From positions 124,001-188,000 of the IMG/VR virus record IMGVR_UViG_3300037502_003770: 64,000 nt of DNA. One strand, written 5' to 3'. The notes below the pieces were generated by a model. The model searched no databases. It worked only from the letters and a program-made list of their open reading frames with translations, and was not told the origin of the DNA. Shown here one piece after another: positions 10,104 through 34,948 of the stretch (position 1 is its first letter; every line of letters begins with the position of its first letter). Position numbers and translations under genes: made by a program.

Positions 10104-10112
10104 TAATATATC

Positions 10113-10556: not shown

Positions 10557-10563
10557 TTTTACA

Positions 10564-18164: not shown

Positions 18165-19410
18165 TAAATTATATAATATTTATATTAATAATTATTTTTT
18201 ACTATTTAATAATATACATTTAAATTAATGAAATTAATTCACAAAGGTTATAAATATAGAATCTACCCAAATAAAGAACAAACTGAATTGTTAAATAAAC
18301 ATTTTGGTTCTTGTAGATTTGTATTTAATTATTTCCTTAATTTAAAAATGAATACCTATAAACAAGAAAAGAAAAATCTAAATAATAATTATCTATCTTC
18401 ATTATTAACCCTTCTTAAAAAAGAACAGAATTATTCTTGGTTAAATGAAATTAATTCTCAAAGTTTGCAAGCTTCTTTAAAAAATGTTGACGTTGCTTAT
18501 GATAGGTTTTTTAAAAAGATAAGTCAATATCCAAAATTTAAAAGTAAAAATGATAAACAAAGTTTTAAAGTACCACAGTTTTTAACTATTGAAAATGATT
18601 TATTATATTTGCCTAAATTTAAGAAAGGAATTAAAATAAATATTCATAGAGATTTTAAAGGAAAGATTTTATATGGAACTGTATCAAAAACACCAACAGG
18701 TAAATATTATGTATCTATCACTTGTAAACAAGAATATATTCCTTTTGAAAAGACAGGTTCTATTATAGGAATTGATACTGGTATTAAAGATTTAGCTATC
18801 CTTTCAGATAAAACTGTTTATGAAAATAAAAAGGTTTTAAAGAAGAGGATAAAGAAAATAAAATATAAACAAAGGCAATTAAGTAAGAAAGTAAAAGGTA
18901 GCAAGAGTAGGATAAAACAAAGGAATAAACTTGCAATAGAACATGAGAAAGTAGTAAATATTAGAAAAGATTATTTACATAAAGTAAGTACAGAAATTAT
19001 CAAAAACCACGATATTATATGTATTGAAGACCTTTCAATAAAAAACATGATGAAGAACCATAAATTAGCGCAAGCATTTTCTGATGCAAGTTTAGGTACA
19101 TTCTATGATATGTTAGAATATAAAGCTTCTTTTAATGAGAAGAAAATTATTAAGATAGGAAGATTTTTTGCAAGTAGTAAAACTTGTTCAAAATGTAATT
19201 ATATTAATGAGGAATTAACATTAAAGGATAGGGAATGGACTTGCAAAGGTTGTGGCACGTTGCATGATAGAGATTATAATGCAAGTATAAATATTAAAAA
19301 CGAAGGTTTAAAGATATTATCTGGTTTGGGTTGCAAGTCGGATATAAAACAAAAAGTGATGGAGGCGTTTCCGTTAGGAGAGTCAATGAAATCATATATT
19401 TAGAAATAAA
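18165..19410 (+). mobile_element. IS200/IS605-family element, solo TnpB (IS1341-like), boundaries approximate
   Basis: TnpB ORF without TnpA, interrupting a promoter-gene-terminator unit. Confidence 0.65.
18228..19403 (+). CDS. tnpB: RNA-guided endonuclease TnpB
   Basis: HTH_OrfB start YKYRIYPNKEQ..FGSCRFVFN; RuvC-I GIDTG, RuvC-II IEDL, zinc finger CSKC/CKGC, RuvC-III HDRDYNASINI. Confidence 0.95.
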   Translation: MKLIHKGYKYRIYPNKEQTELLNKHFGSCRFVFNYFLNLKMNTYKQEKKNLNNNYLSSLLTLLKKEQNYSWLNEINSQSLQASLKNVDVAYDRFFKKISQYPKFKSKNDKQSFKVPQFLTIENDLLYLPKFKKGIKINIHRDFKGKILYGTVSKTPTGKYYVSITCKQEYIPFEKTGSIIGIDTGIKDLAILSDKTVYENKKVLKKRIKKIKYKQRQLSKKVKGSKSRIKQRNKLAIEHEKVVNIRKDYLHKVSTEIIKNHDIICIEDLSIKNMMKNHKLAQAFSDASLGTFYDMLEYKASFNEKKIIKIGRFFASSKTCSKCNYINEELTLKDREWTCKGCGTLHDRDYNASINIKNEGLKILSGLGCKSDIKQKVMEAFPLGESMKSYI

Positions 19411-19542: not shown

Positions 19543-19788
19543 ATGGTAAAGGAAAAATCCGATTTATTGAAAGAAAATCTTATTAAAGAAATAATATTGA
19601 TTAAGTCCGAATCTGAATCAAAAAATATTCCGTCAGGTTCTATTTTAAAACTTATTATTTTTTATAATCCAACTTATAATTTAACTGTTATAAAATTTAA
19701 AAATAAAAGTATTAAAATTATTAAAAATAAATTATTTACATATAATTATGGTCATAGTAGTTCAATACATAAAACAATCTATCATTAA
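19543..19788 (+). CDS. LLDLQ-family paralogue, probably deleted or frameshifted near the C-terminus
   Basis: LKENLIKEII present; C-motif missing in frame but VVQYIK...* appears in another frame at ~19757-19813. Confidence 0.55.
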   Translation: MVKEKSDLLKENLIKEIILIKSESESKNIPSGSILKLIIFYNPTYNLTVIKFKNKSIKIIKNKLFTYNYGHSSSIHKTIYH

Positions 19789-19812
19789 AGAAAATAAACT
19801 TTTGAATTCGTA

Positions 19813-20136
19813 ATGAAAGAAAATCTTATTGAAAAAATATTTTCCCTTGAATGGAAAATACCTAAAAATAATTATGTATATCTTAATAAAGGAAATTTTC
19901 GTTCAAACAAATATTCACTAAATGCAATAAAAATAGAAAATAAAGAAATACTCATACACTATAAAAATAAATATTATGATATATATTTTTATGATGAAGT
20001 AACAACATTAGAAAAAAAGAATGTTCTTAAATCTTTATCTATTTTAGATTTACAATTTATTTTTCTATTTCTAAATTCAGAAAAAAATCAAAAACCTATT
20101 AATATGAAATTAAATTTTGATTCCATACCTAGATAA
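19813..20136 (+). CDS. LLDLQ-family paralogue
   Basis: MKENLIEKIF ... LSILDLQFIF. Confidence 0.8.
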   Translation: MKENLIEKIFSLEWKIPKNNYVYLNKGNFRSNKYSLNAIKIENKEILIHYKNKYYDIYFYDEVTTLEKKNVLKSLSILDLQFIFLFLNSEKNQKPINMKLNFDSIPR

Positions 20137-20147
20137 AATATATTCTT

Positions 20148-20453
20148 ATGAAAGAAAAATTAATTCAAGAAATATTGAATCTTGTTAAAAATACAAGAAA
20201 AGATTTTATTAACGATATTACTAACCCTTTTATCACTAATATCTATTATATAGACCCTGTATATGGCACTCGTAAAATATATTTAATGGATATAGTTGAT
20301 ATAGATATATACCAAATTATTACTGTAAAAAATTTAAATCTAGGTGATGATTATCGTAGTATAATTAATAAAACAGAAATAATAAGAATATTAAACCTTG
20401 TTTCATTATTAGACCTGCAATATATTCTATTATTATTAAAAAAATTTTTATGA
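20148..20453 (+). CDS. LLDLQ-family paralogue
   Basis: MKEKLIQEIL ... VSLLDLQYIL. Confidence 0.8.
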   Translation: MKEKLIQEILNLVKNTRKDFINDITNPFITNIYYIDPVYGTRKIYLMDIVDIDIYQIITVKNLNLGDDYRSIINKTEIIRILNLVSLLDLQYILLLLKKFL

Positions 20454-20752
20454 AAGAAATACTCCTTAAAGAAATAACCTCACTCCTTAAAGAAAAAGAT
20501 TTTACTTTAAAAAGTAACAATTATTATACTATTAATCTAAACCTTAAAAAAATACAAAATAAAGAATATTATTATTTCCTAAGAAATATACATTATAATA
20601 AAAATAATAATTCCTATATTCTAACATACAGTTTTAAAAATCAAACTCATCTAACAGATGATTATATCACACTTAAAAATAAAAATATAACCAAATATAT
20701 AAAACATATTTCCCTTCTTGATTTGCAATTTATAAAATTATCTCTTTTATGA
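20450..20752 (+). CDS. LLDLQ-family paralogue
   Basis: MKEILLKEIT ... ISLLDLQFIK. Confidence 0.8.
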   Translation: MKEILLKEITSLLKEKDFTLKSNNYYTINLNLKKIQNKEYYYFLRNIHYNKNNNSYILTYSFKNQTHLTDDYITLKNKNITKYIKHISLLDLQFIKLSLL

Positions 20753-20982
20753 AAGAAAAACTTATTCAAGAAATAAAAGATATTATTGAAAAATATGACC
20801 TTCATTATATGACAATATATACAGATATATATAAATTATCAAACCATATAAAAACTAATCGTACTCTAATGAAAGAAGTTTTCCTTTCTGATTTAAAAGA
20901 ATTTAACTTACTTGAATTGCAATTTACTTCTATAAAAATAAAAAATGATGCAAATAAACAAAGAAAAAATATCTTTTCTTAA
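20749..20982 (+). CDS. LLDLQ-family paralogue (short insert)
   Basis: MKEKLIQEIK ... FNLLELQFTS. Confidence 0.8.
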   Translation: MKEKLIQEIKDIIEKYDLHYMTIYTDIYKLSNHIKTNRTLMKEVFLSDLKEFNLLELQFTSIKIKNDANKQRKNIFS

Positions 20983-21295
20983 AGAAAAATCTTTACTTAA
21001 ATTTAAAAACCTTTTGGAATCACATAATAATTATGAAAATATCCTTAATTTTAGATATTATGTAAAACAAAAACATGGAGAAATTATAGGATATCCAAAA
21101 CCAATTTTAATAAATAATTATTATACTATACTTGAACTAAGAAAAAAACATTATACCTTATATACCCTACTTTATAAAACCACAAAAGAAAATAAATATA
21201 TATTCAAAGATTATAACCTTAATAAAATTATGAAAATATTTAAAAATATATCACTTCTTGACCTCCAATTTATTCTAATTCATATCAAAAAATAA
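20945..21295 (+). CDS. LLDLQ-family paralogue
   Basis: ISLLDLQFILIHIK. Confidence 0.8.
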   Translation: MMQINKEKISFLKEKSLLKFKNLLESHNNYENILNFRYYVKQKHGEIIGYPKPILINNYYTILELRKKHYTLYTLLYKTTKENKYIFKDYNLNKIMKIFKNISLLDLQFILIHIKK

Positions 21296-21306
21296 AACTT
21301 AATTAT

Positions 21307-21651
21307 ATGGATATATCACTTCTTAAAGAAAACCTTTTTAATCAAATATATAACATACTTGAAAAACAAAAAGAATTAGAATTAACAACACCCAATATTT
21401 ATATAAAATTTTTAGATGCTCATTCTATACATAATAAAAACCTATACCTACTAAAACTAAAATATCTAAATTCAAATAAAAAATATGAACTCCATTATAA
21501 ATATGATTATGATGGTAGTAATTTAAACCATTATAGAGTAAATTATTTAACAATTCAAGGAAAAGATATTTTATTGAAATCTATATCCTTACTTGACTTG
21601 CAATTTATTCTAATTCATATCAAAAACCGCTCACAATCAATTCAAATTTAA
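21307..21651 (+). CDS. LLDLQ-family paralogue
   Basis: LKENLFNQIY ... ISLLDLQFILIHIK. Confidence 0.8.
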   Translation: MDISLLKENLFNQIYNILEKQKELELTTPNIYIKFLDAHSIHNKNLYLLKLKYLNSNKKYELHYKYDYDGSNLNHYRVNYLTIQGKDILLKSISLLDLQFILIHIKNRSQSIQI

Positions 21652-21702
21652 AAAGGATATTCCACTACCAAAATATATTCTTCTCTTAAAATAACCATTT
21701 TT

Positions 21703-21981
21703 ATGAAAGAAAAAGATTTTATTAAAGAAAAACTCTTTAAACAAATAAAATACTATATTAAAAAATATCAACTTTGTTATATCCCATACACAGGTATTAA
21801 TGATTTACATAATATAAATAAAAACTCACCAACATATAAAATGTTTATTCATAATATAAATGAACTCCTTTCAAAAATAAAAACATTCCCACTATCAGAT
21901 TTAATCTTTCTAAAAAACCAAATTAAAAATGATGCACTCAAAAATAAAACAAAAACTAATAAATCAAATTCTTTCACCTAA
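21703..21981 (+). CDS. LLDLQ-family paralogue
   Basis: IKEKLFKQIK ... FPLSDLIFLK. Confidence 0.75.
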   Translation: MKEKDFIKEKLFKQIKYYIKKYQLCYIPYTGINDLHNINKNSPTYKMFIHNINELLSKIKTFPLSDLIFLKNQIKNDALKNKTKTNKSNSFT

Positions 21982-22345
21982 TAATAATCTAGTTGATAAT
22001 AAACATAATGTAGTAATAAGATATACCTCCGTTAATAACCCTAAACTCTATAATATAAAATTCTTTAATAAAGAAAAAACAACACATTACTCACTAAATG
22101 AACTCTCAATTAATAAACTCTTTATTAATACAAAAAAAATTAAAAGACATATAATAATTTATCAAAATAATTACCACCTTAAACCAATAACAATATCTCA
22201 TAAAAAATATATACACTCTTACCTAAACCTTATCCCACTACTTGACCTGCTCTTTATTAAAAATCTAATAATAAAAGAAAATAATAGAATAAAAAATTCT
22301 ATATTAAGAAATACTTTACTACTAGATAAACTTAAAAATGAATAA
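21929..22345 (+). CDS. LLDLQ-family paralogue
   Basis: IKQKLINQIL ... IPLLDLLFIK. Confidence 0.75.
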   Translation: MMHSKIKQKLINQILSPNNNLVDNKHNVVIRYTSVNNPKLYNIKFFNKEKTTHYSLNELSINKLFINTKKIKRHIIIYQNNYHLKPITISHKKYIHSYLNLIPLLDLLFIKNLIIKENNRIKNSILRNTLLLDKLKNE

Positions 22346-22595
22346 AATAACCTTTATTAAAAATACTCTTATTAAAGATATAAATAATTATAAAAATAAA
22401 TCACTTTCTCTTAATATAGAAAATTGTACATTTAAAATAAATAATACCTTATATAAATTAGAATTTTTTCAATATGGTGAAATATGTTATAGTACAAATG
22501 GTTGCTATACTTTCTTAAAAGATGATATTTTTTTATCTAAAATATCTTTACTCGACTTGCAATATATCCTTTTAAAAATGAAATCTTCTTTATGA
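22338..22595 (+). CDS. LLDLQ-family paralogue
   Basis: IKNTLIKDIN ... ISLLDLQYIL. Confidence 0.8.
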   Translation: MNKITFIKNTLIKDINNYKNKSLSLNIENCTFKINNTLYKLEFFQYGEICYSTNGCYTFLKDDIFLSKISLLDLQYILLKMKSSL

Positions 22596-22825
22596 AAGAA
22601 AAACTTGCCCTAAATATCCTACATACTATAAATCATTATAACCTTTTAAATAAAAAAATCCTTTATAATAATTTAATTTATGATTTTAAATCTTTTTATA
22701 CCATACTAGATTTTCAAGACCTACCCTTACTTGAACTACAATATTTGAAAATATTCCTTAAAACGATTGCAACCTATGGAAAAAATTACTCTTATTGGAA
22801 AAATTCTATCCCTTCTGAAAAATAA
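22592..22825 (+). CDS. LLDLQ-family paralogue (short insert)
   Basis: MKEKLALNIL ... LPLLELQYLK. Confidence 0.75.
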   Translation: MKEKLALNILHTINHYNLLNKKILYNNLIYDFKSFYTILDFQDLPLLELQYLKIFLKTIATYGKNYSYWKNSIPSEK

Positions 22826-23078
22826 AAACTTCTCACTAATAAAAAATAATAACCTAAAATTTATTTTAACTAATCAATATAATGGCTCATTATATTTCAT
22901 CTCTTATAATAATGTAAACAGTTATTATTATATACATTATTTTTACAATAATGACACCCATTTAACTACTGACTCTATTACAGAAAAAGAACTTTATTCA
23001 TACCTACTCTCTATGAATCTACTTGATATTCTCTTTATAAAATCTTATCTTATTAAAAATTCTATATATTACAGTTAG
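22767..23078 (+). CDS. LLDLQ-family paralogue (ATG at 22776 likely)
   Basis: EKITLIGKIL ... MNLLDILFIK. Confidence 0.75.
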   Translation: MQPMEKITLIGKILSLLKNKNFSLIKNNNLKFILTNQYNGSLYFISYNNVNSYYYIHYFYNNDTHLTTDSITEKELYSYLLSMNLLDILFIKSYLIKNSIYYS

Positions 23079-23083
23079 TAACC

Positions 23084-24035
23084 TAAAACATTTATAACAT
23101 TCTTTTAAATAAAACAATGTTTCCAAAACATAAATAGTTAAATATCAAAGAGTTATGAAAAATAATGGTATGTAATAATCACAAAGATTGTTTATTGAAA
23201 AGAATGTTTATACAAAACATTCTTTACTTAATAAAAAGAATCTTCTTAATAAAAACATTGTTCCTGATGAAAACATTGTTTTTTTTTAACAGCACTTTTT
23301 TTTAATAAAACATTCTTTCTAATAAAAACATTCTTCCCTTATATATTACATACATTGTATATAAAACATTGTTCTTAATAAGTAATATATTCTATTACAA
23401 TTACTTATATATAATAAAATAAACTTTTCTTGAATAAAAAGTTGTTTTTATATAGTACTTTTTTTATTGAAACCTATTTTTTCTATAGCACTTTTTTTCT
23501 TTTATATTATAGTTTTTATCTAAAAAAGGTTATTTTACTTGAAAACCTAATTTTTTCTACAGTACTTTTTCTTTAAAGAAGATACTTTTTTAATAAAAGT
23601 TGTTTTTTTCTATAGTACTTTTTTTCTTTTAAAAAAGATTATTTTACTTGAAAACCTAATTTTTTCTATAGTACTTTTTTTCTTTAAGTAAGGTTATTTC
23701 TTTCAGAAGGGAAGCTGTTTATCCCCTCGCCCATCGAGACACTCTAATTTTTTGAAATAAGTTTTCTTAAAGAAGACTTTTTTTCAAAAAACATATATTT
23801 CTTTAAGAAAACTTATTTTTTTATACAGCACTTTTTTTCAGAAAGTAAGTTTTTTATACAGCACTTTTTTTCTAAAACATATTCTTTTTTAAAGGGATAA
23901 ATTTTTCTTAGTAATTATTTCTTTTACAAAGGTAAAACTTTTTTCTTTAAAAACAAAATATTTCTTTAAAGTTTTATTTTTTCCTACAGCACTTTTTTTC
24001 TAAAAGTAAGTTTTTTTCTATAGTACTTTTTTTCT
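23084..24035 (+). repeat. non-coding iteron-like array
   Basis: About 9 AAA(C/G)A(T/A)T(G/C)TT boxes (23084-23375) and 10 A(C/T)AG(C/T)ACTTTTT boxes (23289, 23452, 23485, 23559, 23612, 23668, 23825, 23858, 23986, 24020); ~55 bp duplication 23522/23631. Confidence 0.8.
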
Positions 24036-24236
24036 TTTACAAAGATAGATATAATTTTTATATATACAAAATATTTCTTTAAAAAATTTCTTACCTTATA
24101 TATAGGTATGTTATACCGCTATGTTCCTGATGCCTGAAAAAAAACTTAAAAAACTTTAAGAAAAATTTGGTGGTATGAAAAATTGCCTTTATCTTTGCAG
24201 TAGATAAACAACCCAATAACCTTAACCGCTACTAAT

Positions 24237-24917
24237 ATGGCAAGTGAACTTAAAAGAGTACTGCACAAAGAAAGTAAAATTTTGTTTGTTGCAACCTATT
24301 CTGAGGATGCAGAAAGTCCTCGCACAATGTATGACAACTTATGCACTATGTTATGTTTTCATAATAGGTATAATTTAGGTGATACTGATTCACTTTTAAG
24401 AAAAAAAGGTTTCAACTATGATAGTGATGATTATGATAGTTGGGAAGAGATGGAGAAAGCTATCATAAAGGAGAATGATATTGCAATAATATTGCCTTTA
24501 TGGTTATACGACCACAGTGGATTAACAATTTCTTTTGGTAGAACTTGCAGCTGGGATAGTGGACAGGTAGGTTTTATACTTGTTGATAAAGCAACTATAA
24601 GAAAAGAATATAGTTGTAAGAGAATAAGTAAGAAACTTTTACTTAAAGTAGAAGAAATTCTAAAAAATGAAGTAAAAGAGTACGATTCATATTTAAGAGG
24701 TGATGTATATGACCTTAACCAATATACAATTTCTGATGAATATATGTCAGAAATAGAATCTGAAAATATCGATATTGATGAAATAGATATTGATATGTTA
24801 GAAGAGGTTGAATCTTGTTCCAATTATATTGGAGAAAGTTGGTTAGATGATGCTATAAATAATAGTATATCTTATCTAAATAAAAAATATCTTTCTCAAA
24901 AAGCTGAAACAATTTAA
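24237..24917 (+). CDS. conserved-looking phage hypothetical protein
   Basis: LPLWLYDHSGLTIS...WDSGQVGFI...YDSYLRGDVY; promoter at 24166-24197. Confidence 0.8.
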   Translation: MASELKRVLHKESKILFVATYSEDAESPRTMYDNLCTMLCFHNRYNLGDTDSLLRKKGFNYDSDDYDSWEEMEKAIIKENDIAIILPLWLYDHSGLTISFGRTCSWDSGQVGFILVDKATIRKEYSCKRISKKLLLKVEEILKNEVKEYDSYLRGDVYDLNQYTISDEYMSEIESENIDIDEIDIDMLEEVESCSNYIGESWLDDAINNSISYLNKKYLSQKAETI

Positions 24918-24938
24918 AATAGGGTTATATTGAACTTT

Positions 24939-25040
24939 AAAGCCTATCTTTTTTAAAGGTAGGTTTTTTTTCTTAAAGGTATTGTTTTATTCAGAAAAAA
25001 GGTTTATCTTTGTAATAAGTAAAACGAACTAATAACCTTT
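24939..25040 (+). repeat. terminator+promoter cassette repeat (related copies at 25446, 26222, 26386, 27317)
   Basis: AAAGCCTATCTTTTTTAAAGGTAGGTTTTT; TTATTCAGAAAAAAGGTTTATCTTTGTAATAAGTAAAACGAACTAATAACCTTT repeated at ~26393-26446. Confidence 0.8.
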
Positions 25041-25056
25041 AACCCTTAGAAAAGCT

Positions 25057-25416
25057 ATGTTAAACCATATAGGCGTAAGAGTAAAAAATTTGAGTGAACT
25101 TGTAGGTATATTTTTTACCACAGGTGAGCAGGTACAAAGTATTTCTAATACTTGTACTTTACATGATAATCATTTTTATCCTGATTCAAGGATTGAATTA
25201 TGGTTATACAGAACTTGCATAGCAAGGATAACAAAAGATGGTAAGTTATTTATTACTTATGGTGAGTATGGTAATAGTATGACTACTTCCAAAAGATTAA
25301 ATACTATTTTAAAAGATAGTAGTTTGAACTTGAGTAGAGAAAAAATTGCTCATTACACTAAATTGGCAAGGGAAAAAAAGCCTAATGAAGTGGAAATAAT
25401 AGAGTACAAAAAATAG
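25057..25416 (+). CDS. hypothetical protein
   Basis: Promoter-gene-terminator unit. Confidence 0.75.
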   Translation: MLNHIGVRVKNLSELVGIFFTTGEQVQSISNTCTLHDNHFYPDSRIELWLYRTCIARITKDGKLFITYGEYGNSMTTSKRLNTILKDSSLNLSREKIAHYTKLAREKKPNEVEIIEYKK

Positions 25417-25905
25417 TATTAATGATTGGGATTTTGGTTTATTTAAAGCCTACTTTTTTTAAAGGTAGGTTTTTTTCTTATATACTGATTCTTACTTAAC
25501 ATAATGAAAGCCTTTAGAATTGAATAAAAACTTTTATCCTGAAAGAAAGGTCGAATACTTAAAAATTTTACTTATTAAAAAAAGTTAAGTTTTTTGGTAA
25601 GAGTATTGTTTATTGAAAAAAATATGTTTATCTTTGTAATAAGTAAAGCAGTTCAAAAGAAAGAGCCTTTACCCAAGATTAAAACTTTTTTTCTTAAAGA
25701 AGTAGGATATATCAAAAATAGTCCTTATCTTTACAGAAAGAAAAGTACCACAAAGAAAGAGGCTTTCCTCAAGGAACAAAAAAACTTTAAAAATATTTCG
25801 CTTAAAGTTTGGAAGTATCAAAATAAAGTCTTAACTTTGTATAAGTAAAAACAATCAACCCAACCAATTTACCTTATGGTGTAGAGGCTAACCAAAATAC
25901 ATATT

Positions 25906-26157
25906 ATGAAAAAGTACACAATCGAGTTTTCAGTAACTTCAAAGAAGTTAAACACTACTTTAAATTCCGAGATGGAAATGCAAAGTAGTTCTGAAAATAT
26001 GGTACAAGCTTTTAAAGAAGCTACCATATTAGTAAATAAGTTAGCACCTATGTTTTCTGGTGAGGTCGAGTTCGATGTTACCAACGTGAAAATGAATAAG
26101 GTACATACTAAACCACGTAAAAGCAAAAATGAACCAGCAGCACCAGTAACCGCTTAA
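25906..26157 (+). CDS. hypothetical protein
   Basis: Promoter TAACTTTG at 25832; terminator at 26222. Confidence 0.7.
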   Translation: MKKYTIEFSVTSKKLNTTLNSEMEMQSSSENMVQAFKEATILVNKLAPMFSGEVEFDVTNVKMNKVHTKPRKSKNEPAAPVTA

Positions 26158-26453
26158 TATGTCCTGAGTACCTTGTAAACTACTCACTTCATATATACAA
26201 GTCAATAATATTTTACTTTCAAAAAACCTATCTTTCTTTAAGGATAGGTTTTTTCTTATATAATTAATTTTATCCTGATACCTTACTTAACATAATGAAA
26301 GCCTTTAGAATTGAATAGATTTTTATTAGTAGGATATTTCCTTGAATAAAGAAATTTTATATAAGGAAAAAATATTTTCAGAAAGTTATTGTTTATTCAG
26401 AAAAAAGGTTTATCTTTGTAATAAGTAAAACGAACTAATAACCTTTAGAAAAT

Positions 26454-26687
26454 ATGAGAAAAAACTCAACCCTTAGCAGAATAATTACTAAAGTAAATTG
26501 TTTTTATGGTGCACCTATGGGAAGGCAAAATGTAGGTAATTTACCTGATAATAAAACTATCTTTGATTGTAAAGTACCTATGAATGGTGCTTATGACGTT
26601 GGTGGCGTTTATTGGGGTTTAGGTTCTGAATTAAGGGTGTCTTATACAAAAGATTTAACCTTTATACATTTTTACAGAAAAGAATAA
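26454..26687 (+). CDS. hypothetical protein, Gly-rich
   Basis: YGAPMGR...GAYDVGGVYWGLG. Confidence 0.75.
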   Translation: MRKNSTLSRIITKVNCFYGAPMGRQNVGNLPDNKTIFDCKVPMNGAYDVGGVYWGLGSELRVSYTKDLTFIHFYRKE

Positions 26688-26771
26688 AAATATTTCCTTA
26701 AAGATTAGGTTTATTCAAAAAAATACCTTATCTTTACAGTAAGTTAAAACCTCAAAAAACCCTTATTCCTT

Positions 26772-26939
26772 ATGAAAAAATTCCTTTCCATTATCCTGAT
26801 TGCAGTTGTACTTTCAAGTTGTGCAACTTATCAATATCAACAACCTTGCCCACCTACCTATAAAGGTACGAGCAAAAAACGTACTAAATATATTAGTACT
26901 GAAAAGAATTGTTTAACCTATAAAAGAAATTCTAACTAA
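26772..26939 (+). CDS. small lipoprotein (55 aa, not in track)
   Basis: MKKFLSIILIAVVLSSC: signal peptide II with LSSC lipobox. Confidence 0.75.
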   Translation: MKKFLSIILIAVVLSSCATYQYQQPCPPTYKGTSKKRTKYISTEKNCLTYKRNSN

Positions 26940-26940
26940 T

Positions 26941-27273
26941 ATGAGAAAGTTCTTGCAAAATTGTTATTACAATATAGGTGGAATTATCCTTTCAAAAGGT
27001 GTTTCTATCTTAAATAAGATTCCTTTTTTTAAGAAAAGAGTTTCTTATATGGTTAAGCAAACAATAGTAGCTATCATATTTGATAATATGGTGTTACTTG
27101 TTAGTACAATAATATTTATTAGAATAACTAATTTGATAGTTTCTAATAATATTGTTAGTCAATATGCTGAATATGTTATATTGTCTTTAATGGTAATATA
27201 TTTTGTACCTGCAATGTATATACTTTGGAGACGTATGGAAAGGCATAGATTAGCATCAAAAGAACTAGAATAG
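26941..27273 (+). CDS. membrane protein
   Basis: Two hydrophobic segments. Confidence 0.7.
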   Translation: MRKFLQNCYYNIGGIILSKGVSILNKIPFFKKRVSYMVKQTIVAIIFDNMVLLVSTIIFIRITNLIVSNNIVSQYAEYVILSLMVIYFVPAMYILWRRMERHRLASKELE

Positions 27274-27450
27274 AATTAAGGTATTTGGTTAAATTTGGTT
27301 TAAGTAAAACGTTATTAAAGCCTATCTTTTTTAAAGGTAGGTTTTTTCTTATATAAAATTTTTTTTCTTAAAGGTATTGTTTTATTCAGAAATTATGTTT
27401 ACCTTTACACTAGGTAATTAAACCAATAACCTTTAACCCTTTGGCAGTCT

Positions 27451-27903
27451 ATGAATACAGAAGTGGCAACCCTAACCAACAAAGAACGTATCAAAAAACA
27501 TTTCTTTCAGATAATGAAGGATGTAAAATTTGTAAATACTTCTGATAATTTTTTAGAAGTATTAAACAATTATGATACAGTAGATATTGAAGAAATATCA
27601 AAAAAGTTATTAAAAGAATTATCAAAAGTTAGTGATTTTCTAAGAAAAGAGAATATACATTTATTAGATTATGATATAAGTTTAAAAATTTATGAACTAA
27701 TAATTCAACATTCGTTAGTTTATTGTATTTTAAGAGAAAGTATATATCTTGACGTTTCAATTGCTAGATATTTTGCTAGTATTGCTAGATTAAATTATAG
27801 AAAAGAAAATAATTTAAGTGACACTTTTATTACTACTGAACAAACTAGAATAGAAGGTAAAGCTTATTTAGATGCAATTTCTAAATTTAAGTATAAAGAA
27901 TAA
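27451..27903 (+). CDS. hypothetical protein
   Basis: Promoter-gene-terminator unit. Confidence 0.75.
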   Translation: MNTEVATLTNKERIKKHFFQIMKDVKFVNTSDNFLEVLNNYDTVDIEEISKKLLKELSKVSDFLRKENIHLLDYDISLKIYELIIQHSLVYCILRESIYLDVSIARYFASIARLNYRKENNLSDTFITTEQTRIEGKAYLDAISKFKYKE

Positions 27904-27984
27904 CCTAGAAGAATCTTTTATTTGAGAAAAACCTATTTCTTTTAGAAGTAGGTTTTTTTGTATATGAGAATTTTTCTATTATAT

Positions 27985-28510
27985 GAAAAAAAGTGCTGTT
28001 GAAAAAAATAGAATTTTATTAAATAAAACAATCTTTTTAATAAAACATTGTCTCAAATAAAAGAATCTTTATCTTAAAAGAATGTTTTTATAAAGAATGT
28101 TTATATATTTTAAGAGAAAATCTTCTTTTATTAGAAAAAAGTACCGTTGTAAATGGAGTTTCTTTTAGAAACTACAATACAAAAAGTATAATATTCAAAA
28201 AAAGTGCTGTACTAAAAATAGAATTTTACTTAAAAAGATACCAATTTTCAAAAAAAGTGCTATACAAAAAGTATAATTATATCATAATGTATGTATATAT
28301 TTTAATAAAAAAGAGTTTTATTAAAAAAAAGTACAGTACTAAAAATAGAAAATTCTTATATAATGGAATATTTTGCTATACAAAAAGTGTAAAATTAAAA
28401 AAAGTACTGTAGTATTTTTTACTTTTAAAGAATTTTAGTCCAATATAAGAGAAAAATTCCCTTATTAGAGAATAGTTTTTCTTTAATAAGAGAATTTTTT
28501 TGCTGTAGTA
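27985..28510 (-). repeat. second iteron-like array, inverted relative to the 23.3-24.0 kb array
   Basis: AAAAAAGT(G/A)C(T/C/A)(G/A)T at ~27987, 28135, 28198, 28251, 28325, 28398, plus AAA(C/G)A(A/T)T(C/G)T boxes at 28025-28102. Confidence 0.7.
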
Positions 28511-28766
28511 TTTTTCTATATGAGAATTTTTTTCTTATGGTAGATTTTTTTTCTCAAAAAGTATTTTCTCATTTAGTAGAATTTTTCTCCTATTGTATAT
28601 TTCTTATTGTAGAAAAGAGGTTTTCTCAAAAAGTAGTATCATTTCTAGCAAAGTATATCATTTCTTTGAGAAAAAAATAATTAAAAAAAAGTTTGGATAT
28701 ATGAAAAATAGATGTTTACTTTGTCTTGTTATTGCAATGGTGCTTTAACATTAACCCTTAAACCGT

Positions 28767-29267
28767 ATGGCAACTGCATTGTTAACCTTAGAAAATTGTA
28801 TTTACGAAATTGTAAACAATGGAAAAAATATAATTTTCCCTAAAGAAATTGAATCATTCAGTAATATTCTGATTGATAAAGAAAAAATATTAAATGAATA
28901 TGATTTTAATAAATTTGGATATATTCCTAGTTTAGAAAATCAATCTTTAAAAACAATTATTCAACATAATACAGAATTCAATGAATATCCGAATTATTGT
29001 TTACGTTCAATAATTGCAAACTTAATTCAAAATGAATTTAGTAATTATTATCAAAGTATATTTGATAAAAATATTAATGACCATAAATACATACCTGATG
29101 CAGAATATTTAGGTACACAATATCATAATTTCGTTTACAATAAAACGATGTTAGAAGTAATACAACACTTCAAACTAAATTTTAACTATAATCATTATAT
29201 AAATGATTTAGTTTTTCTTACTGATTTATTATACAAATATTCAGATTATGAAAAAGTAAATAATTAA
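28767..29267 (+). CDS. hypothetical protein
   Basis: Promoter-gene-terminator unit. Confidence 0.75.
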   Translation: MATALLTLENCIYEIVNNGKNIIFPKEIESFSNILIDKEKILNEYDFNKFGYIPSLENQSLKTIIQHNTEFNEYPNYCLRSIIANLIQNEFSNYYQSIFDKNINDHKYIPDAEYLGTQYHNFVYNKTMLEVIQHFKLNFNYNHYINDLVFLTDLLYKYSDYEKVNN

Positions 29268-29352
29268 TTGAAAGTAAAGCCTATTTCTTAATGAAGTAGG
29301 CTTTTTTTATATCCTTACTTTTTCTTAATGGTTACTACTTGTTTAGGTAGTC

Positions 29353-29570
29353 TTATTTCTTTAAGTAAAGCAGTTTTAAAGGTTCCTGATACTGCAAAGG
29401 TAGTTTGATACCTTTAAACTTTACAGTTGCTTAGATAGTCTTTCTAGTGGTTCCTGATACCCTAGAAAAAAAGTTTACTGAAAATTTGGATAACTCAAAG
29501 TAAGGTTATATCTTTGCAAGTGAATAGTAATAAAGCTATTCAATAACCTTAAACCTGATTCCCTTATGAA
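29353..29570 (+). repeat. upstream regulatory block duplicated at 31721-31943
   Basis: TTATTTCTTTAAGTAAAGCAGTTTTAAAGGTTCCTGAT, GGTTCCTGATACCCTAGAAAAAAAGTTTACTGAAAATTTGGATA and AAACCTGATTCCCTTATGAA are shared. Confidence 0.8.
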
Positions 29571-31461
29571 GTACCAACTTAACCCAAGATTAGATAGCTG
29601 CCAACTTAATGCAGTTAATACAGTTGCTCAAGCTACTGAAAATGAAGTTGTAAAAGTTGAGGCTGTTGCTGGTTCAGGCAAAACTACTACAATCATTGAA
29701 TCTATTAAGGAACTTGTAAATAGGGACTTAATACAATACAATAATAATGTATTGGTTCAGTTTAATAAAAATATTGCAACTGAAACAAAAGAGAAAATTA
29801 TGTTCAATAAATTAGATAAGTTTATTGATTGCAGAACTATTCATTCTGTATTTTTTCCTGCATTAAATGTAGTAAAAAAGTTCTTTGGAAAATTGCAAGT
29901 TAAATTAGTTGAGGATAATTTTAAAGCTACCTCAATTGTGAATAAGTATGTAGATGCTTATTGTGAAAATAATAATATTGATTCAGAAAAATCAATTGAA
30001 TTATTTAATCTTTCTGATATGTCAAGATTATTCGATTTAATCCGTTTATTTGCAATTACTGATTATTCAGATGTGGATGCAATTAACGAAATAATAGAAC
30101 GTTACAGTTTAAATATTTCACCGATTGCATTACAATTAATGCAAAATATCTTTGAACTGCAATATCCAAGTAGATATAAAGATATTGAAGTATTTACTAG
30201 TGGTGCTTTTAAATATAGTTTCTATTCACGTTCTGATAAAAAAACTGTAACCGTTTTTGAAAAGAACTTAAATAATAATATTCCTTATATGTATTTTGAT
30301 TTTACCGATATGCTTTATATTGCATATAAGTATTATTCAAGCTTACAAAACGAGCTACCTAGTTTTGAATACATATTTATAGATGAGGCTCAAGACTTAT
30401 CTAAATTGGATTATTGTTTAATTCAATTGATTAAACAAAAAAATTCAAAACTTATTTATGTTGGAGACCACCTGCAAGCTATTAATATGTTTAAAGGTGC
30501 TTTACCTGAATTGTATAAAAATTTCGATGCTACATACAATTGTGAATTAAATTACAATTACCGTAGTGGTTCCGAAATAATTCAGTATGTAAATGAAAAT
30601 ACAGTATGTAAAAATATTGTAAGTGGTTTAAATACTCAAGGTATAATTAATACCGATTATTTAACTACTTCTGAAAATAAAAACAAACTAATATCTTTTG
30701 TAAATGAATTAAAATCATTTTCCGAAGATAAAAGTAATAAAGAAAAACATTTAATACTTTCTGAAAAAAACGATATTTTAATTTCGTTGTATATTCAGTT
30801 AGCAAAAAATAATGTTTCTGATATTACTTTAAAAGGTGTAGCCGAATTATTAACAAGTTACAATACTTGTTTAAACTTTCAGAATGATAAAATGAAAGTA
30901 AAAGCAGTTAAAGATACTGATTCAATCGATACCGTTTTAAATGCAATACAATTGCAATTAAATATGAAAAGAAAAACTTTGCAGTCTTTGTATAATTTCG
31001 ATAATGAAAACGATTATCTAAAAGATACTGATTACTTCAATTTTAGTATCATTGAATATTTAGTAAAAGAACTTACTTCAATGAAGGAATATAATTCTGT
31101 AAAAGAATTAAGTTTGCAAGTAAATAAAATATTGAATAGTTATGATAGTGGTAAGCTTAGTAATAAAATTACCCTAATGACTGTTCATAAAGCCAAAGGT
31201 TTAGAAAGTGATATTGTAACTATCGTTAATTCAGATTTTAAACCTAAAGAAAAATTAAATAAAAATACAGGCAAACCTTATCCAATACCTAACTGGTTAG
31301 TTGAACAGTTTGAAAATTTAAAATATGTTGCTTTTACTCGTGCAGTAAAACAATTAAATATTTTAACATTGCCACAAACTGAAAATGAAAAAACAGGTTT
31401 TAAAAATAGTGGTAGGATGTATAAGGAAAATAACAAAGGTCAAACAGTAAGGAATTTTTAA
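29566..31461 (+). CDS. UvrD/Rep-like superfamily 1 helicase
   Basis: AVAGSGKTT, FNKNIA, RTIHS, DFTDML, FIDEAQD, VGDHLQAI, NYRS, TVHKAKGLE, YVAFTRA. Confidence 0.92.
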   Translation: MKYQLNPRLDSCQLNAVNTVAQATENEVVKVEAVAGSGKTTTIIESIKELVNRDLIQYNNNVLVQFNKNIATETKEKIMFNKLDKFIDCRTIHSVFFPALNVVKKFFGKLQVKLVEDNFKATSIVNKYVDAYCENNNIDSEKSIELFNLSDMSRLFDLIRLFAITDYSDVDAINEIIERYSLNISPIALQLMQNIFELQYPSRYKDIEVFTSGAFKYSFYSRSDKKTVTVFEKNLNNNIPYMYFDFTDMLYIAYKYYSSLQNELPSFEYIFIDEAQDLSKLDYCLIQLIKQKNSKLIYVGDHLQAINMFKGALPELYKNFDATYNCELNYNYRSGSEIIQYVNENTVCKNIVSGLNTQGIINTDYLTTSENKNKLISFVNELKSFSEDKSNKEKHLILSEKNDILISLYIQLAKNNVSDITLKGVAELLTSYNTCLNFQNDKMKVKAVKDTDSIDTVLNAIQLQLNMKRKTLQSLYNFDNENDYLKDTDYFNFSIIEYLVKELTSMKEYNSVKELSLQVNKILNSYDSGKLSNKITLMTVHKAKGLESDIVTIVNSDFKPKEKLNKNTGKPYPIPNWLVEQFENLKYVAFTRAVKQLNILTLPQTENEKTGFKNSGRMYKENNKGQTVRNF

Positions 31462-32154: not shown

Positions 32155-32325
32155 ATGGAAAAGACTTTCAGAAAATCAATTGCCTTAATAATTGATTCAT
32201 TATTGTATTTAATACTTTTATTAGTATTGAATTATTCAATTGAAAACATATTTCTTTTAATAGGAAGTGTTTTATTAGGAACATATATATATTTAATTCA
32301 TATAATTAAAAAATATCCTGATTGA
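32155..32325 (+). CDS. small two-TM membrane protein (56 aa, not in track)
   Basis: MEKTFRKSIALIIDSLLYLILLLVLNY...IKKYPD*. Confidence 0.6.
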   Translation: MEKTFRKSIALIIDSLLYLILLLVLNYSIENIFLLIGSVLLGTYIYLIHIIKKYPD

Positions 32326-32357
32326 ACGATGTCGCAAATAGTATTCTCATATATGGG

Positions 32358-32373
32358 AGTTCCACGTGGAACA
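32358..32373. promoter_or_regulatory. parS-like centromere site
   Basis: AGTTCCACGTGGAACA: perfect 14 bp palindrome, 15/16 match to the chromosomal parS form TGTTCCACGTGGAACA. Confidence 0.7.
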
Positions 32374-32376
32374 GTA

Positions 32377-32437
32377 GGGGTGGGGGTGGGTATCCCCTAG
32401 GGGGAGGGGAGGGGAGGTGGGGAGGACAGGGGTGGGG
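32377..32437 (+). other. G-rich tract with G-quadruplex potential
   Basis: Nine runs of 3 or more G in 61 nt, in an otherwise very AT-rich genome. Confidence 0.75.
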
Positions 32438-32483
32438 ACTACATCGAAACATTTTTTCCAAAAAAACAGAATTTTTCTAAGGA

Positions 32484-32624
32484 ACTTTTTTTTAAAGAAA
32501 ATAACCCTTTCTTAAAGGAAGAAATTGATTTACAGATACTTATGTTTTATTTAAAAGACTTTTTTTTAAAGAAAATAAGCTTTCTTTAAGAAAGAAATTG
32601 ATTTAGAGATAGTTATGTTTTATT
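32484..32624 (+). repeat. tandem imperfect repeat, period 74 bp, 2 copies
   Basis: ACTTTTTTTTAAAGAAAATAA...AAGAAATTGATTTA.AGATA.TTATGTTTTATT twice. Confidence 0.8.
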
Positions 32625-32836
32625 CTAAATAAATCTTTTTCAGAAGGTTATAAAATTTTAAGAAAACAGAATTTTTCTAAAGTACTTTTTCTTTACAAGA
32701 ATATTCTTTATGTGTAGATTTTCTAATAGGGGAAGGGGGGGGGTATTTTTATGAGTGGTCAATAAAATTTTTTTGTGGAAAAATTATGATTTTATAAAGA
32801 GAGCTATTTATTTAGAAAGGCGAATAATATTTAAAG

Positions 32837-34345: not shown

Positions 34346-34944
34346 TGAAGAATTTTAATAAATTAAATGATACTAAACATGAGATAGATTTAATTTCTTT
34401 AAGTGATTTTTTACTTGAGAAGGATGATGATTATTTAGATAAGTTTATAAAAAAAGAATTTAAAAAACCTGAAGATATAACAGAGACATATCTTAAATTA
34501 TGGTATAAGTATATATTTAATATAGATAGTTATTTTGGTGTATCATACACTGAGTTTGATTTTACTGGTGATGATTTTCCTATTGAGTGGTATATGGATG
34601 CAAAATTTTTAGATACTTTATTTGAAGAATCTGGTATTAAGTTTTTAATGTGTGTACCAAAAGTATTAAGATATGATTATGAAGTTTGTGAACGTTCTAT
34701 TAATAAAAACCCTATTTCTTTAAAGTATGTCCCAAAAGATATTGAGAATTATTATGGTTTAGTAAAGCTTGCTTTTAAGAAAAAACAAAATTTAATTGGA
34801 CAAAAATGGTTTCCAAAGGAATATATTCCTCAATTAAAGAATGATTTGGATGATGAATTATCTCAACATTATTTAAATCTTCAGGAGCATATTTCAAAAG
34901 AAGTGAGGAAACTTTTAAAAGAATACTATTTAAAGAAAATATAG
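34345..34944 (+). CDS. DUF4116-like repeat protein with C-terminal tag
   Basis: EIDLISLSDFLLEKDD ... LQEHISKEVRKLLKE. Confidence 0.7.
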   Translation: MKNFNKLNDTKHEIDLISLSDFLLEKDDDYLDKFIKKEFKKPEDITETYLKLWYKYIFNIDSYFGVSYTEFDFTGDDFPIEWYMDAKFLDTLFEESGIKFLMCVPKVLRYDYEVCERSINKNPISLKYVPKDIENYYGLVKLAFKKKQNLIGQKWFPKEYIPQLKNDLDDELSQHYLNLQEHISKEVRKLLKEYYLKKI

Positions 34945-34948
34945 TTAG

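What the first reader, a model, noticed from the sequence alone, without database searches (positions are those of the whole stretch)
23084..28510. Two opposed two-motif iteron-like arrays about 4 kb apart
About 1 kb of non-coding DNA has ten same-strand A(C/T)AG(C/T)ACTTTTT boxes, several spaced 33-34 or 53-56 bp apart (about 3 or 5 helical turns), plus a cluster of quasi-palindromic AA(C/G)AnT(G/C)TT boxes. At 27985-28510 both motifs recur, with the first on the opposite strand. Phased boxes with A-tracts suggest a wrapped nucleoprotein complex, such as an initiator, centromere or DNA-injection stop signal.
Basis: partly seen in the sequence, partly recalled or inferred. Interest (0 to 1): 0.6.

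Follow-up and report, generated by a model that had tools for sequence, protein, structure and literature searches.

The report
Opposed phased repeat arrays, jumbo phage
Two long non-coding stretches in an uncultured 313-kb phage hold conserved short DNA boxes, one kind pointing in opposite directions in the two stretches, that look like docking sites for DNA-binding proteins, perhaps a replication origin, but their function is unproven.

Summary
AYAGYACTTTTT occurs 14 times in the window (0.17 expected): ten on the + strand at 23289-24031 and four on the - strand at 27988-28410, plus two one-mismatch - copies. The 312,694-bp IMG/VR phage genome (22% GC) has only two more copies. The palindrome AAAACAWTGTTTT clusters in the same two places. 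These are the two longest ORF-free regions of the genome.

Relatives from other metagenomes keep both motifs and their orientation. Array 2 is as conserved as the neighbouring genes. Box number and the exact place of the + boxes vary. Box spacings (31-34, 53, 63, 73-74, 147-148 bp) fit multiples of about 10.6 bp, so the boxes lie on one face of the helix. Generic A/T tracts are not phased.

The arrays lie inside the only region with host-type (Bacteroidota-like) promoters. Two conserved leftward promoters fire into array 1.

The genome has no ParA, tubulin, integrase, resolvase, Rep_3, lambda-O, Tus or RTP homologue, and the window has no ParB.

Best reading, at low confidence (about 0.3): paired protein-binding arrays of a replication origin or control region, in the style of P4 ori/crr or Vibrio ori2. 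Polar barrier, early-gene silencing and packaging or injection roles remain open.

The parts
23079..24236 (.). Array 1: an ORF-free region of 1158 bp between a block of small + strand ORFs and the first gene of the early cassette.
   Evidence: No ORF of 60 aa or more; second-longest raw gap of the genome scan and longest true ORF-free stretch. Sequence read.
23096..23373 (.). Motif-2 cluster of array 1: ten AACAWTGTT-type palindromic boxes (AAAACAWTGTTTT and the half-variants AACATTCTT / AAGAATGTT). Centres are 16-18 or 37-38 bp apart, apart from one 71-bp gap (23117 to 23188).
   Evidence: TRF finds period 18 with 6.6 copies at 23214-23335. The cluster is kept in relative L009 at 5003-5220.
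23289..24031 (+). Ten motif-1 boxes, all on the + strand, with first bases at 23289, 23452, 23485, 23559, 23612, 23668, 23825, 23858, 23986 and 24020. The extended box of about 32 bp reads AAAAYYTAWTTTTT-NN-AYAGYAC-T7.
   Evidence: TRF finds 56-bp and 73-bp units. Copy number differs in relatives: contig joints 23444>23977 and 23449>23994.
23706..23744 (+). The only GC-rich island inside array 1 (..TATCCCCTCGCCCATCGAGACACT). It is kept in L009 at 5458-5490. A longer, G-rich version lies at 32310-32460.
23927..23956 (-). Leftward host-type promoter-like site (TTG-N19-TACCTTTG) that fires into array 1.
   Evidence: Kept in L009 at 5826 on the - strand. It is one of only four - strand sites of this kind in the genome.
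24040..24069 (-). Second leftward host-type promoter-like site (TTG-N19-TATCTTTG). The box at 24020 begins a few bases downstream of its -7 element, close to where transcription would be expected to start.
   Evidence: Kept in L009 at 5904 on the - strand.
24237..27903 (+). Early gene cassette between the arrays. It holds eight small genes of 226, 119, (84), 83, 77, 55, 110 and 150 aa. Most have their own host-type promoter, and several a hairpin terminator.
   Evidence: Gene order is kept in L009 and L048. The 226-aa product folds with confidence (pLDDT 90.7) but matches no solved fold and no Pfam family.
27904..28766 (.). Array 2: an ORF-free region of 863 bp. It is the conserved array.
   Evidence: It is 72% identical to L009 over 792 aligned columns, the same level as the neighbouring genes (66.7-75%). 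In the pairwise alignment the identities are: motif-2 boxes 89%, motif-1 boxes 79%, spacers 77%, right part 81%.
27988..28410 (-). Six motif-1 boxes on the - strand: exact copies at 27988, 28199, 28252 and 28399, and one-mismatch copies at 28136 and 28326. Spacings are 148, 63, 53, 74 and 73 bp. The last box is nearly palindromic (AAAAAAAGTACTGTAGTATTTTTT).
   Evidence: L009 has eight - boxes at 9657-10101 with spacings 31, 148, 32, 53, 74, 74 and 32.
28027..28101 (.). Motif-2 cluster of array 2: four to five boxes 15-17 bp apart, just right of the first - box. The asymmetric variants are mostly in the opposite orientation to those of array 1.
   Evidence: L009 has six boxes at 9731-9824 with 16-17 bp spacing.
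28280..28301 (.). Short alternating purine/pyrimidine tract (TATCATAATGTATGTATATAT) in the middle of the - boxes. It is kept in L009 as TATCATAATATGCGTGTATATA.
28420..28690 (+). Right part of array 2. It holds repeated GAGAATTTTT(Y) boxes (motif 3, also at 27962-27976 and as the distal half of the motif-1 box), a conserved inverted repeat AGAAAAATTC..GAATTTTT, and long unique conserved stretches.
   Evidence: TRF finds period 19 at 28511-28554. L054 and L009 carry the same stretch.
29566..31461 (+). UvrD/Rep-type SF1 helicase. In relative L009 it directly follows array 2.

Best explanation
The two arrays are cis-acting assembly sites for at least two sequence-specific DNA-binding proteins.

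A dimeric protein would sit on the palindromic motif-2 boxes, packed about 17 bp apart. A second protein would bind the asymmetric motif-1 box of about 32 bp. These boxes lie at whole numbers of helical turns from one another, so the bound proteins line up on one face of the DNA.

The core module (a motif-2 cluster plus an AACAGCAC box) is present in both arrays in opposite orientation. The two complexes could therefore pair and loop out the 4-kb early gene cassette.

The most likely job is a replication origin with its control region. Array 2 would be the conserved core, next to the SF1 helicase gene. Array 1 would be the partner array, opened or primed by the two conserved leftward promoters that transcribe into it.

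Shown here: the motifs, their restriction to these two places, their orientation, the phasing, the conservation, the promoter-like sites and the gene context. Inferred: that proteins bind, that the arrays pair, and that the function is replication.
For: - Statistics and restriction to two sites.
- The arrays are the two longest ORF-free regions of a densely coding 313-kb genome.
- Box positions peak at a period of 10.5-10.7 bp in each array taken alone.
- Array 2 is conserved at the level of coding DNA, although neighbouring proteins are only 33-70% identical.
- Both motifs and their orientation are kept in L009, L048 and L054, and in contigs from two other studies.
- Several further conserved elements are present: motif 3, a purine/pyrimidine tract and a GC island. 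This complexity is typical of origins.
- Two tandem conserved promoters point into array 1. From my own knowledge, the T7 primary origin has two promoters followed by an AT-rich stretch, and the T4 and ColE1 origins use R-loops.
- A helicase gene lies beside array 2.
- There is precedent for origins with two kinds of initiator site split into an initiating part and a controlling part that handcuff: Vibrio cholerae ori2 (PMC6090056). From my own knowledge, P4 ori/crr lie 4.5 kb apart, and P1 incC/incA flank repA.
Against: - No initiator was recognised: Rep_3 and Phage_rep_O are absent.
- The gene next to array 1 does not look like a DNA-binding initiator.
- The DNA polymerase B and DnaB-like helicase genes lie about 130 kb away.
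- Cumulative GC skew follows gene direction and shows no origin-like turn at the arrays.
- Motif-1 spacing is irregular (3, 5, 6, 7 and 14 turns), unlike the regular spacing of about two turns in classic iterons.
- In L009 the motif-1 part of array 1 is replaced by unrelated repeats. The + boxes sit instead between genes 1 and 2 in L009 and L048. This behaviour fits transcription-unit accessories better than a fixed origin.
- The phasing tests use few points, and homologous arrays are not independent.
Confidence: 0.3

Rival explanations
1. Polar barrier or insulator. The asymmetric motif-1 box (a conserved 7-mer followed directly by T7) would be an orientation-dependent stop site for polymerases or replication forks. 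It could act bound by a protein, as at Tus-Ter, RTP-Ter or the ten TTF-I Sal boxes of mouse rDNA. It could also act on a phage RNA polymerase directly, like the T7 class II signal ATCTGTT followed by a U run. The two opposed groups would fence off the early cassette.
For: - All boxes within an array share one orientation, and the two groups are opposed.
- The boxes are redundant, and their copy number varies between strains.
- The + boxes lie right after the terminator of gene 1 in L009 and L048.
- In the window they lie after an upstream operon for which the scan of 22500-29500 shows no hairpin terminator after its last gene.
- The box ends in a T run on the strand a polymerase would copy into U. 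The comparison systems are cited from my own knowledge.
Against: - No Tus or RTP homologue is present.
- No leftward transcription unit lies near array 2 for its - boxes to stop; the nearest - strand gene is 8 kb away.
- A barrier does not need helical phasing.
- It does not explain the conserved spacers or the motif-2 palindromes.
- No hairpin precedes the T runs.
Confidence: 0.2
2. Regulatory operator arrays for the early region. A phage or host repressor would coat motif 2, and a second factor would bind motif 1. Pairing of the opposed arrays would loop and silence the host-transcribed early cassette and the leftward promoters. Protein p6 of phi29 is a comparable case, since it both represses early promoters and activates replication.
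For: - The arrays lie inside the only part of the genome with host-type promoters: 20 of 22 sites fall in window 0.8-32 kb.
- The box at 24020 begins a few bases downstream of the -7 element of the leftward promoter at 24040-24069.
- Palindromic 13-bp sites in tandem are typical of dimeric repressors.
- The + boxes move together with gene cassettes.
Against: - None of the rightward early promoters overlaps a box.
- The 300-bp motif-2 cluster of array 1 is about 600 bp from the nearest promoter.
- Array 2 contains no promoter-like site at all, yet it is the better conserved array.
- Ten or more sites per array is far more than an operator needs.
Confidence: 0.2
3. A site tied to genome ends or DNA entry: a terminase (pac) recognition region, a boundary of a terminal repeat that carries the host-takeover genes, a T5-like injection stop signal, or Chi-like protective sites facing the ends.
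For: - From my own knowledge, small early genes with strong host promoters and terminators are typical of terminal-repeat host-takeover modules in SPO1 and T5.
- Opposed polar sites would suit enzymes that enter from two ends.
- Contigs of relatives often end in or beside the arrays (L054, L052).
- The record is linear, and both its ends lie in what reads as coding sequence, so the true ends are unknown.
Against: - The large terminase gene is 34 kb away.
- In the source run the arrays lie inside contigs without breaks, and no pile-up of molecule ends could be seen. Only contigs, not reads, were available.
- Contig breaks at repeats are expected in short-read assemblies.
Confidence: 0.1
4. Partition centromere of a plasmid-like prophage, in the style of parS, parC or tubC.
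For: Two-motif arrays of tandem short repeats resemble P1 parS, R1 parC and tubC (from my own knowledge).
Against: - No ParA (AAA_31, CbiA) or tubulin/TubZ is found, beyond weak P-loop matches in the DnaB-like helicase. ParM was not searched.
- No integrase is present.
- ParB_N matches only below its cut-off, 160 kb away in the genome.
- The gene content is that of a lytic jumbo phage.
Confidence: 0.04
5. The arrays encode non-coding RNA, or are selfish or neutral expanding repeats without a cis-acting DNA function.
For: - Spacers in array 2 are conserved almost as well as the boxes.
- Folding z-scores range from -2.4 to -3.7.
- Leftward promoters transcribe array 1.
- Copy number varies.
Against: - There is no Rfam match.
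- No promoter-like site serves array 2.
- The predicted stems come from A-run/T-run repeats, and no compensatory changes were seen in the one relative examined, by inspection of the alignment and fold only.
- Strict orientation, phasing and conservation argue against neutral repeats.
Confidence: 0.1

Closest known systems
Iteron origins with a separate control array: Vibrio cholerae chromosome 2 ori2 (ori2-min plus ori2-inc; 11/12-mers and 29/39-mers, PMC6090056). From my own knowledge also P1 incC/incA, F ori2/incC, and P4 ori/crr (4.5 kb apart).
   Same: Both have clusters of short repeated sites of more than one kind, in non-coding DNA. The sites are split into two arrays up to a few kb apart, with same-orientation head-to-tail sites inside an array and spacing tied to the helical repeat. 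Pairing or handcuffing between arrays is a known mechanism in these systems.
   Different: No initiator gene is recognisable here. Spacing is irregular (3 to 14 turns) rather than 1-2 turns. The arrays are 0.9-1.2 kb long. There is no sequence similarity to any known iteron. Replication function is untested.
Polar arrest sites in opposed groups: Tus-Ter of E. coli, RTP-Ter of B. subtilis, the TTF-I Sal-box arrays of rDNA, and T7 class II terminators (all from my own knowledge).
   Same: Both use asymmetric sites repeated in tandem, with two groups in opposite orientation around a segment. The conserved core of the box is followed by a T run, as in class II signals.
   Different: No Tus or RTP homologue is present. 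The sites are helically phased and come with palindromic motif-2 clusters. No arrest has been shown.
Phage phi29 protein p6 nucleoprotein complex, and the phased repeat boxes of SPP1 and lambda origin or pac regions (from my own knowledge).
   Same: These are phased multi-site protein-DNA complexes in a phage genome. They can serve replication and early-promoter control together.
   Different: p6 binds with low sequence specificity every 24 bp at genome ends. Here there are well-defined sequence boxes at internal positions, as far as the record shows.
Partition centromeres with two motifs or tandem repeats: P1 parS, R1 parC, tubC (from my own knowledge).
   Same: Both show tandem short repeats and two motif types, and a wrapped complex is expected.
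   Different: No partition NTPase or centromere-binding operon was found (ParM not searched), and no sign of plasmid maintenance.

Membership tests
Iteron-type replication origin | Several copies of one short site, in the same orientation, in non-coding DNA. | tested here: met
   Array 1 has 10 of 10 boxes on the + strand and array 2 has 6 of 6 on the - strand. Only 2 other copies exist in 312.7 kb.
Iteron-type replication origin | Regular spacing of about one or two helical turns between sites. | tested here: inconclusive
   Spacings are multiples of about 10.6 bp but irregular: 3, 5, 6, 7, 12, 14 and 15 turns.
Iteron-type replication origin | A cognate initiator gene (Rep, lambda O or RctB type) at or beside the iterons. 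| tested here: not met
   There are no Rep_3 or Phage_rep_O matches in the genome. The adjacent 226-aa protein has no Pfam family and no solved-fold match. The other cassette proteins have no family match at usable thresholds.
Iteron-type replication origin | A second array of the same sites nearby that can pair with the first (incA, crr or ori2-inc type). | tested here: met
   A second array lies 3957 bp away with both motifs, inverted. Only the arrangement was tested, not pairing.
Iteron-type replication origin | Supports initiation of replication. | not testable with these tools
   No culture is available, and only contigs, not raw reads, could be laid. GC skew is dominated by transcription direction.
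Partition centromere (parS / parC / tubC) | An adjacent operon for a partition NTPase and a centromere-binding protein. | tested here: not met
   AAA_31 and CbiA give only weak P-loop matches in the DnaB-like helicase. There is no tubulin. ParB_N matches below its cut-off at genome position 310.5 kb. ParM was not searched.
Polar fork or transcription barrier (Tus-Ter, RTP-Ter) | Asymmetric sites in two opposed groups. | tested here: met
Polar fork or transcription barrier (Tus-Ter, RTP-Ter) | A cognate terminator protein of the Tus or RTP family. | tested here: not met
   There are no PF05472 or PF02334 matches. A protein of another family cannot be excluded.
Invertible segment or transposon ends (Gin/Hin, Mu/Tn7 type) | A recombinase or transposase acting on inverted end sites, and both orientations or mobility of the segment. 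| tested here: not met
   No resolvase or tyrosine recombinase is present. The TnpB gene at 18228-19403 lies outside the segment. No strand-changing joints appear in contigs of four runs. The cassette has the same orientation and the same flanking helicase in relatives.
T5-type injection stop signal or terminal-repeat boundary | A position at a fixed distance from a physical genome end, inside or beside a terminal repeat. | not testable with these tools
   The record is linear without end repeats, and both its ends lie in what reads as coding sequence. Only contigs could be laid, so no molecule ends are visible.
Known RNA families (Rfam 15) | A match at the gathering score. | tested here: not met
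   There are no matches in the window at gathering score, and only chance-level matches at E up to 5 in 22900-28900.

The most novel reading that the evidence does not exclude
The two arrays form a phage-encoded polar trap. Sixteen oriented, helically phased sites in two opposed groups would be bound by an unknown protein that stops replication forks or RNA polymerases in one direction only. This would isolate the host-transcribed early cassette from the rest of a jumbo genome that is transcribed by other machinery. It would be a Ter-like or Sal-box-like system with no relation to Tus or RTP, and the first of its kind in a phage.
Probability: 0.15. Interest if true: 0.8.

Novelty: new variant of a known kind. 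Interest (0 to 1): 0.55.

Why it matters
Almost nothing is known about cis-acting control DNA in jumbo phages, such as origins, boundaries and packaging signals. This holds above all for uncultured phages of Bacteroidota.

This case offers a sharply defined and conserved set of sites: two to three motifs, strict orientation and helical phasing. They sit at the edge of the only host-transcribed region of a 313-kb genome.

The set gives a concrete handle for finding the proteins that bind it, for example by DNA affinity capture or by screening expressed phage proteins. It also gives a way to locate the origin or the early/late boundary in this phage group. If the arrays act as paired or polar elements, they would add a new example to a small class of long-range DNA control devices.

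Tried and rejected
- Motif 1 as a general phage or host promoter: rejected. Only 2 of 18 genome copies lie outside the arrays. The C variant (ACAGCAC) destroys the TA of a Bacteroidota -7 box. The spacing to upstream TTG is inconsistent.
- A third array at genome 120-122 kb, suggested by motif-2 counts: rejected. That region reads as coding sequence.
- Close relatives in IMG/VR, sought by box patterns and by the 226-aa and helicase proteins: none found. The double-box pattern found only unrelated phages with a different palindromic box.
- The single metagenome DNA scan gave a chance hit.
- The 166-aa protein after array 2 has no relatives.
- Phage DNA database search of the region: no match.
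- The 226-aa gene as initiator: it folds with confidence, matches no solved fold, and its invariant residues look like those of an enzyme. The 119-aa protein only resembles viral families of unknown function.
- RNA families: none.
- Intrinsic curvature from phased A/T tracts: not supported.
- GC-skew origin signal: not informative.
- The striking identity of the G-rich element at 32.3 kb with L052 is part of a 2.8-kb block that is 92% identical, so it is not special to the element.
- Relatives of a virus record cannot be drawn by the genome search.
- Literature searches for P4 crr and for jumbo-phage origins gave nothing usable. The statements about P4, P1, F, T7, T4, phi29 and Ter rest on my own knowledge.
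- Read laying was given 5,901 letters. No other genetic code was used.

Full report
CONTEXT

The window is bases 124001-188000 of a single 312,694-bp IMG/VR virus record. The record is linear, has no end repeats, and CheckV puts it at 96% complete. Its GC content is 22%.

The genome encodes a family B DNA polymerase at 17.8 kb, a DnaB-like helicase at 280.5 kb, six tRNAs, and a large terminase at window position 62381. Nearly all genes are on the + strand. It is a very divergent jumbo phage: most large proteins match no PHROG family.

Promoter-like sites of the Bacteroidota type (TTG, 18-22 bases, TAnCTTTG; the type is named from my own knowledge) occur 22 times in the genome. Twenty of them lie in window 0.8-32 kb. 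This is evidently the host-transcribed early region, and the host is probably a member of the Bacteroidota (inference). The source run is labelled a subsurface metagenome.

AYAGYACTTTTT occurs 14 times in the window against 0.17 expected. Ten copies are on the + strand between 23289 and 24031, and four on the - strand between 27988 and 28410. Two further one-mismatch - copies lie at 28136 and 28326. Only two other exact copies exist in the whole genome, both in coding DNA.

The second motif is a palindrome, AAAACAWTGTTTT, with half-variants AACATTCTT and AAGAATGTT. Fourteen of its 15 window hits lie in the arrays, against 3.9 hits expected for the whole window. Centres are 15-18 or 34-38 bp apart, with one 71-bp gap in array 1.

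The two regions, 23079-24236 and 27904-28766, are the longest ORF-free stretches of the genome.

Aligning 40 copies from the window and two relatives gives about 32 bp: AAAAYYTAWTTTTT, two bases, AYAGYAC, then seven T. Its distal half (TAGAATTTT / GAGAATTTT) also occurs alone as a third motif in the right part of array 2 and at 27962.

The arrays are not simple mirror copies. What is inverted is a core module, a motif-2 cluster plus an AACAGCAC box. The boxes at 23280-23302 and 27986-28008 are 96% complementary, and the asymmetric motif-2 variants mostly flip as well. In both arrays further motif-1 boxes follow on the right, in the orientation of the local core.

PHASING

Neighbouring motif-1 boxes are 31-34, 53-56, 63, 73-74, 128, 147-148 and 157 bp apart. 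A Rayleigh periodogram over periods of 8-14 bp peaks at 10.5-10.7 bp for each array taken alone.

For the band 10.4-10.7 bp chosen in advance, random placement reaches the observed value in 0.5% of trials for array 1 and 0.3% for array 2. For the L009 homologue of array 2 it did so in none of 3000 trials. With free choice of period, the window arrays are only borderline (p = 0.05-0.07).

Homologous arrays are not independent, and tandem duplication could contribute. I therefore treat phasing as supported but not proven. A/T tracts as such show no 10-11 bp period, so the arrays are not simply curved DNA.

CONSERVATION

The first gene right of array 1 encodes 226 aa and belongs to a large viral family without a Pfam model. 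Through its closest homologues I reached two syntenic contigs from other samples.

L009 (10,991 bp) has:
- a 1.2-kb non-coding region with a motif-2 cluster;
- gene 1 (63% identical);
- three + boxes 32 bp apart;
- gene 2 (70% identical) and three more shared genes;
- a non-coding region of about 1 kb (9558-10595) with eight - boxes and six motif-2 boxes;
- then the helicase.

L048 (2,557 bp) has five + boxes between genes 1 and 2. L054 starts inside the array 2 homologue.

Array 2 aligns with L009 at 72% identity over 792 columns. This is the same level as the genes around it (66.7-75%), although their proteins are only 33-70% identical. In the pairwise alignment, motif-2 boxes are 89% identical, motif-1 boxes 79%, spacers 77% and the right part 81%.

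In array 1 only three things are kept: the motif-2 cluster, a GC-rich island (23706-23744) and two leftward promoter-like sites. The motif-1 part is replaced in L009 by unrelated repeats of roughly 35-60 bp.

Contigs of two further studies (X3 aquatic, X4 freshwater) cover both arrays at 80-95% identity. They carry different numbers of boxes, shown by the joints 23444>23977, 23449>23994, 28142>28199 and 28210>28409. One X3 contig lacks gene 1.

In short, both motifs, their orientation and array 2 as a whole are under selection. Box number, and the position of the + boxes relative to the gene 1 cassette, are free to vary.

SURROUNDINGS

The 4-kb segment between the arrays holds eight small genes. 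Most have their own host-type promoter, and several a hairpin terminator. None has a recognisable DNA-binding or replication domain. The 226-aa protein folds with confidence but matches no solved fold.

Two of the four - strand host-type promoter sites of the genome lie at the right end of array 1 (23927-23956 and 24040-24069). They point into the array and are conserved in L009. The box at 24020 begins a few bases downstream of the -7 element of the second site.

A UvrD/Rep-type helicase gene follows array 2, directly so in L009.

The genome has no ParA-type ATPase, tubulin, integrase, resolvase, Rep_3, lambda-O, Tus or RTP homologue. ParB_N matches only below its cut-off, at 310.5 kb.

WHAT IT MOST LIKELY IS

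Several features point to sequence-specific proteins bound in a higher-order complex: the restriction to two sites, strict orientation, phasing on one helix face, tandem palindromes at 17 bp, several further conserved elements, and conservation at coding level.

Among functions, I rank a replication origin with a paired control array first (about 0.3), for these reasons:
- the complexity of array 2;
- the neighbouring helicase;
- the tandem promoters that fire into array 1;
- the precedent of origins built from two site types in two domains that handcuff (Vibrio ori2, PMC6090056; P4 ori/crr, P1 and F from my own knowledge).

Four points weigh against it. No initiator is recognisable. The replisome genes are distant. 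The spacing is irregular. The + boxes are mobile relative to gene 1.

A polar barrier (0.2) explains the opposed orientation, the redundancy and the T run. It does not explain the phasing, the motif-2 clusters, or the lack of leftward transcription near array 2.

Early-gene silencing by looping (0.2) fits the location, but no rightward promoter overlaps a box.

Genome-end functions (0.1) cannot be tested without raw reads. A centromere (0.04) is unlikely. An RNA or neutral repeats (0.1) fit poorly with the orientation and phasing. These figures leave a small remainder for something not considered.

NOVELTY AND VERDICT

The sites resemble no catalogued element. Nothing related was found in the phage, IMG/VR or Rfam collections. 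In kind, they are a new variant of phased multi-site protein-binding arrays, in a phage group where no cis-acting element is known. The finding is real and conserved and worth an experiment. Its mechanism remains open.

Noticed in passing
window 32310-32760: The only G-rich stretch of the 22% GC genome. It holds the palindromes GTTCCACGTGGAAC and TCCCCTAGGGGA, then many GGGG runs (G-quadruplex-like), and ends in CATCGAAACATTTT. A short version of the same element is the GC island of array 1. It is followed by two 73-bp repeats with ACTTTTTTTT boxes and a second G run at 32718-32745. It is near-identical in L052 and L055, but the whole 2.8-kb block is 92% identical there.
   Followed up: partly
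window 19543-23078: About a dozen tightly packed small + strand ORFs with strongly negative GC skew (-0.25 to -0.47), opposite to the + strand genes elsewhere in the genome. They are not shared with relative L009.
   Followed up: no
window 18228-19403: A TnpB / IS605 OrfB-type gene (Cas12f-like TNB domain) inside the phage early region.
   Followed up: no
window 800-31900: Twenty of the genome's 22 host-type promoter-like sites (TTG-N18-22-TAnCTTTG) lie here, in two sequence classes (TTGACAA.. and TTGGATATATGAAAA..). The rest of the 313-kb genome must use other promoters. A weak sigma-factor-like protein is encoded at 3020-4267.
   Followed up: partly
L035 12540-12960; L044 11960-12209; L021 150-560: Unrelated IMG/VR phages (38-41% GC) carry arrays of a palindromic box, TTATTGTAAAAAGTACAATAA, at 32-33 bp spacing. 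The arrays sit next to long purine/pyrimidine (GCGTGTG)n tracts, ahead of a gene with a Bacteroidota-type promoter. The layout parallels that of array 2.
   Followed up: partly
window 32837-42216 and 46495-46737, 53577-53797: A run of large DUF4116-repeat proteins with internal 72-75 bp DNA repeats. The family is expanded in this phage and in L052.
   Followed up: no
window 24237-24917: The 226-aa protein belongs to a viral family with more than 2000 members, no Pfam model and no solved-fold match. Its invariant residues (P28, R29, N34, C40, H42, D92, H93, D107, S108, G109, E145, Y149, D150) look like those of an enzyme. The gene is absent from one close relative.
   Followed up: partly
window 24939-24967, 25445-25473, 27317-27345: Nearly identical hairpin terminators (AAAGCCTAYYTTTTTTAAAGGTAGGTTTT) and nearly identical promoters (TTATCTTTGTAATAAGTAAA at 25004, 25628 and 26410) are reused between the cassette genes. 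The short-read contigs of the source run break at or near such repeats.
   Followed up: no
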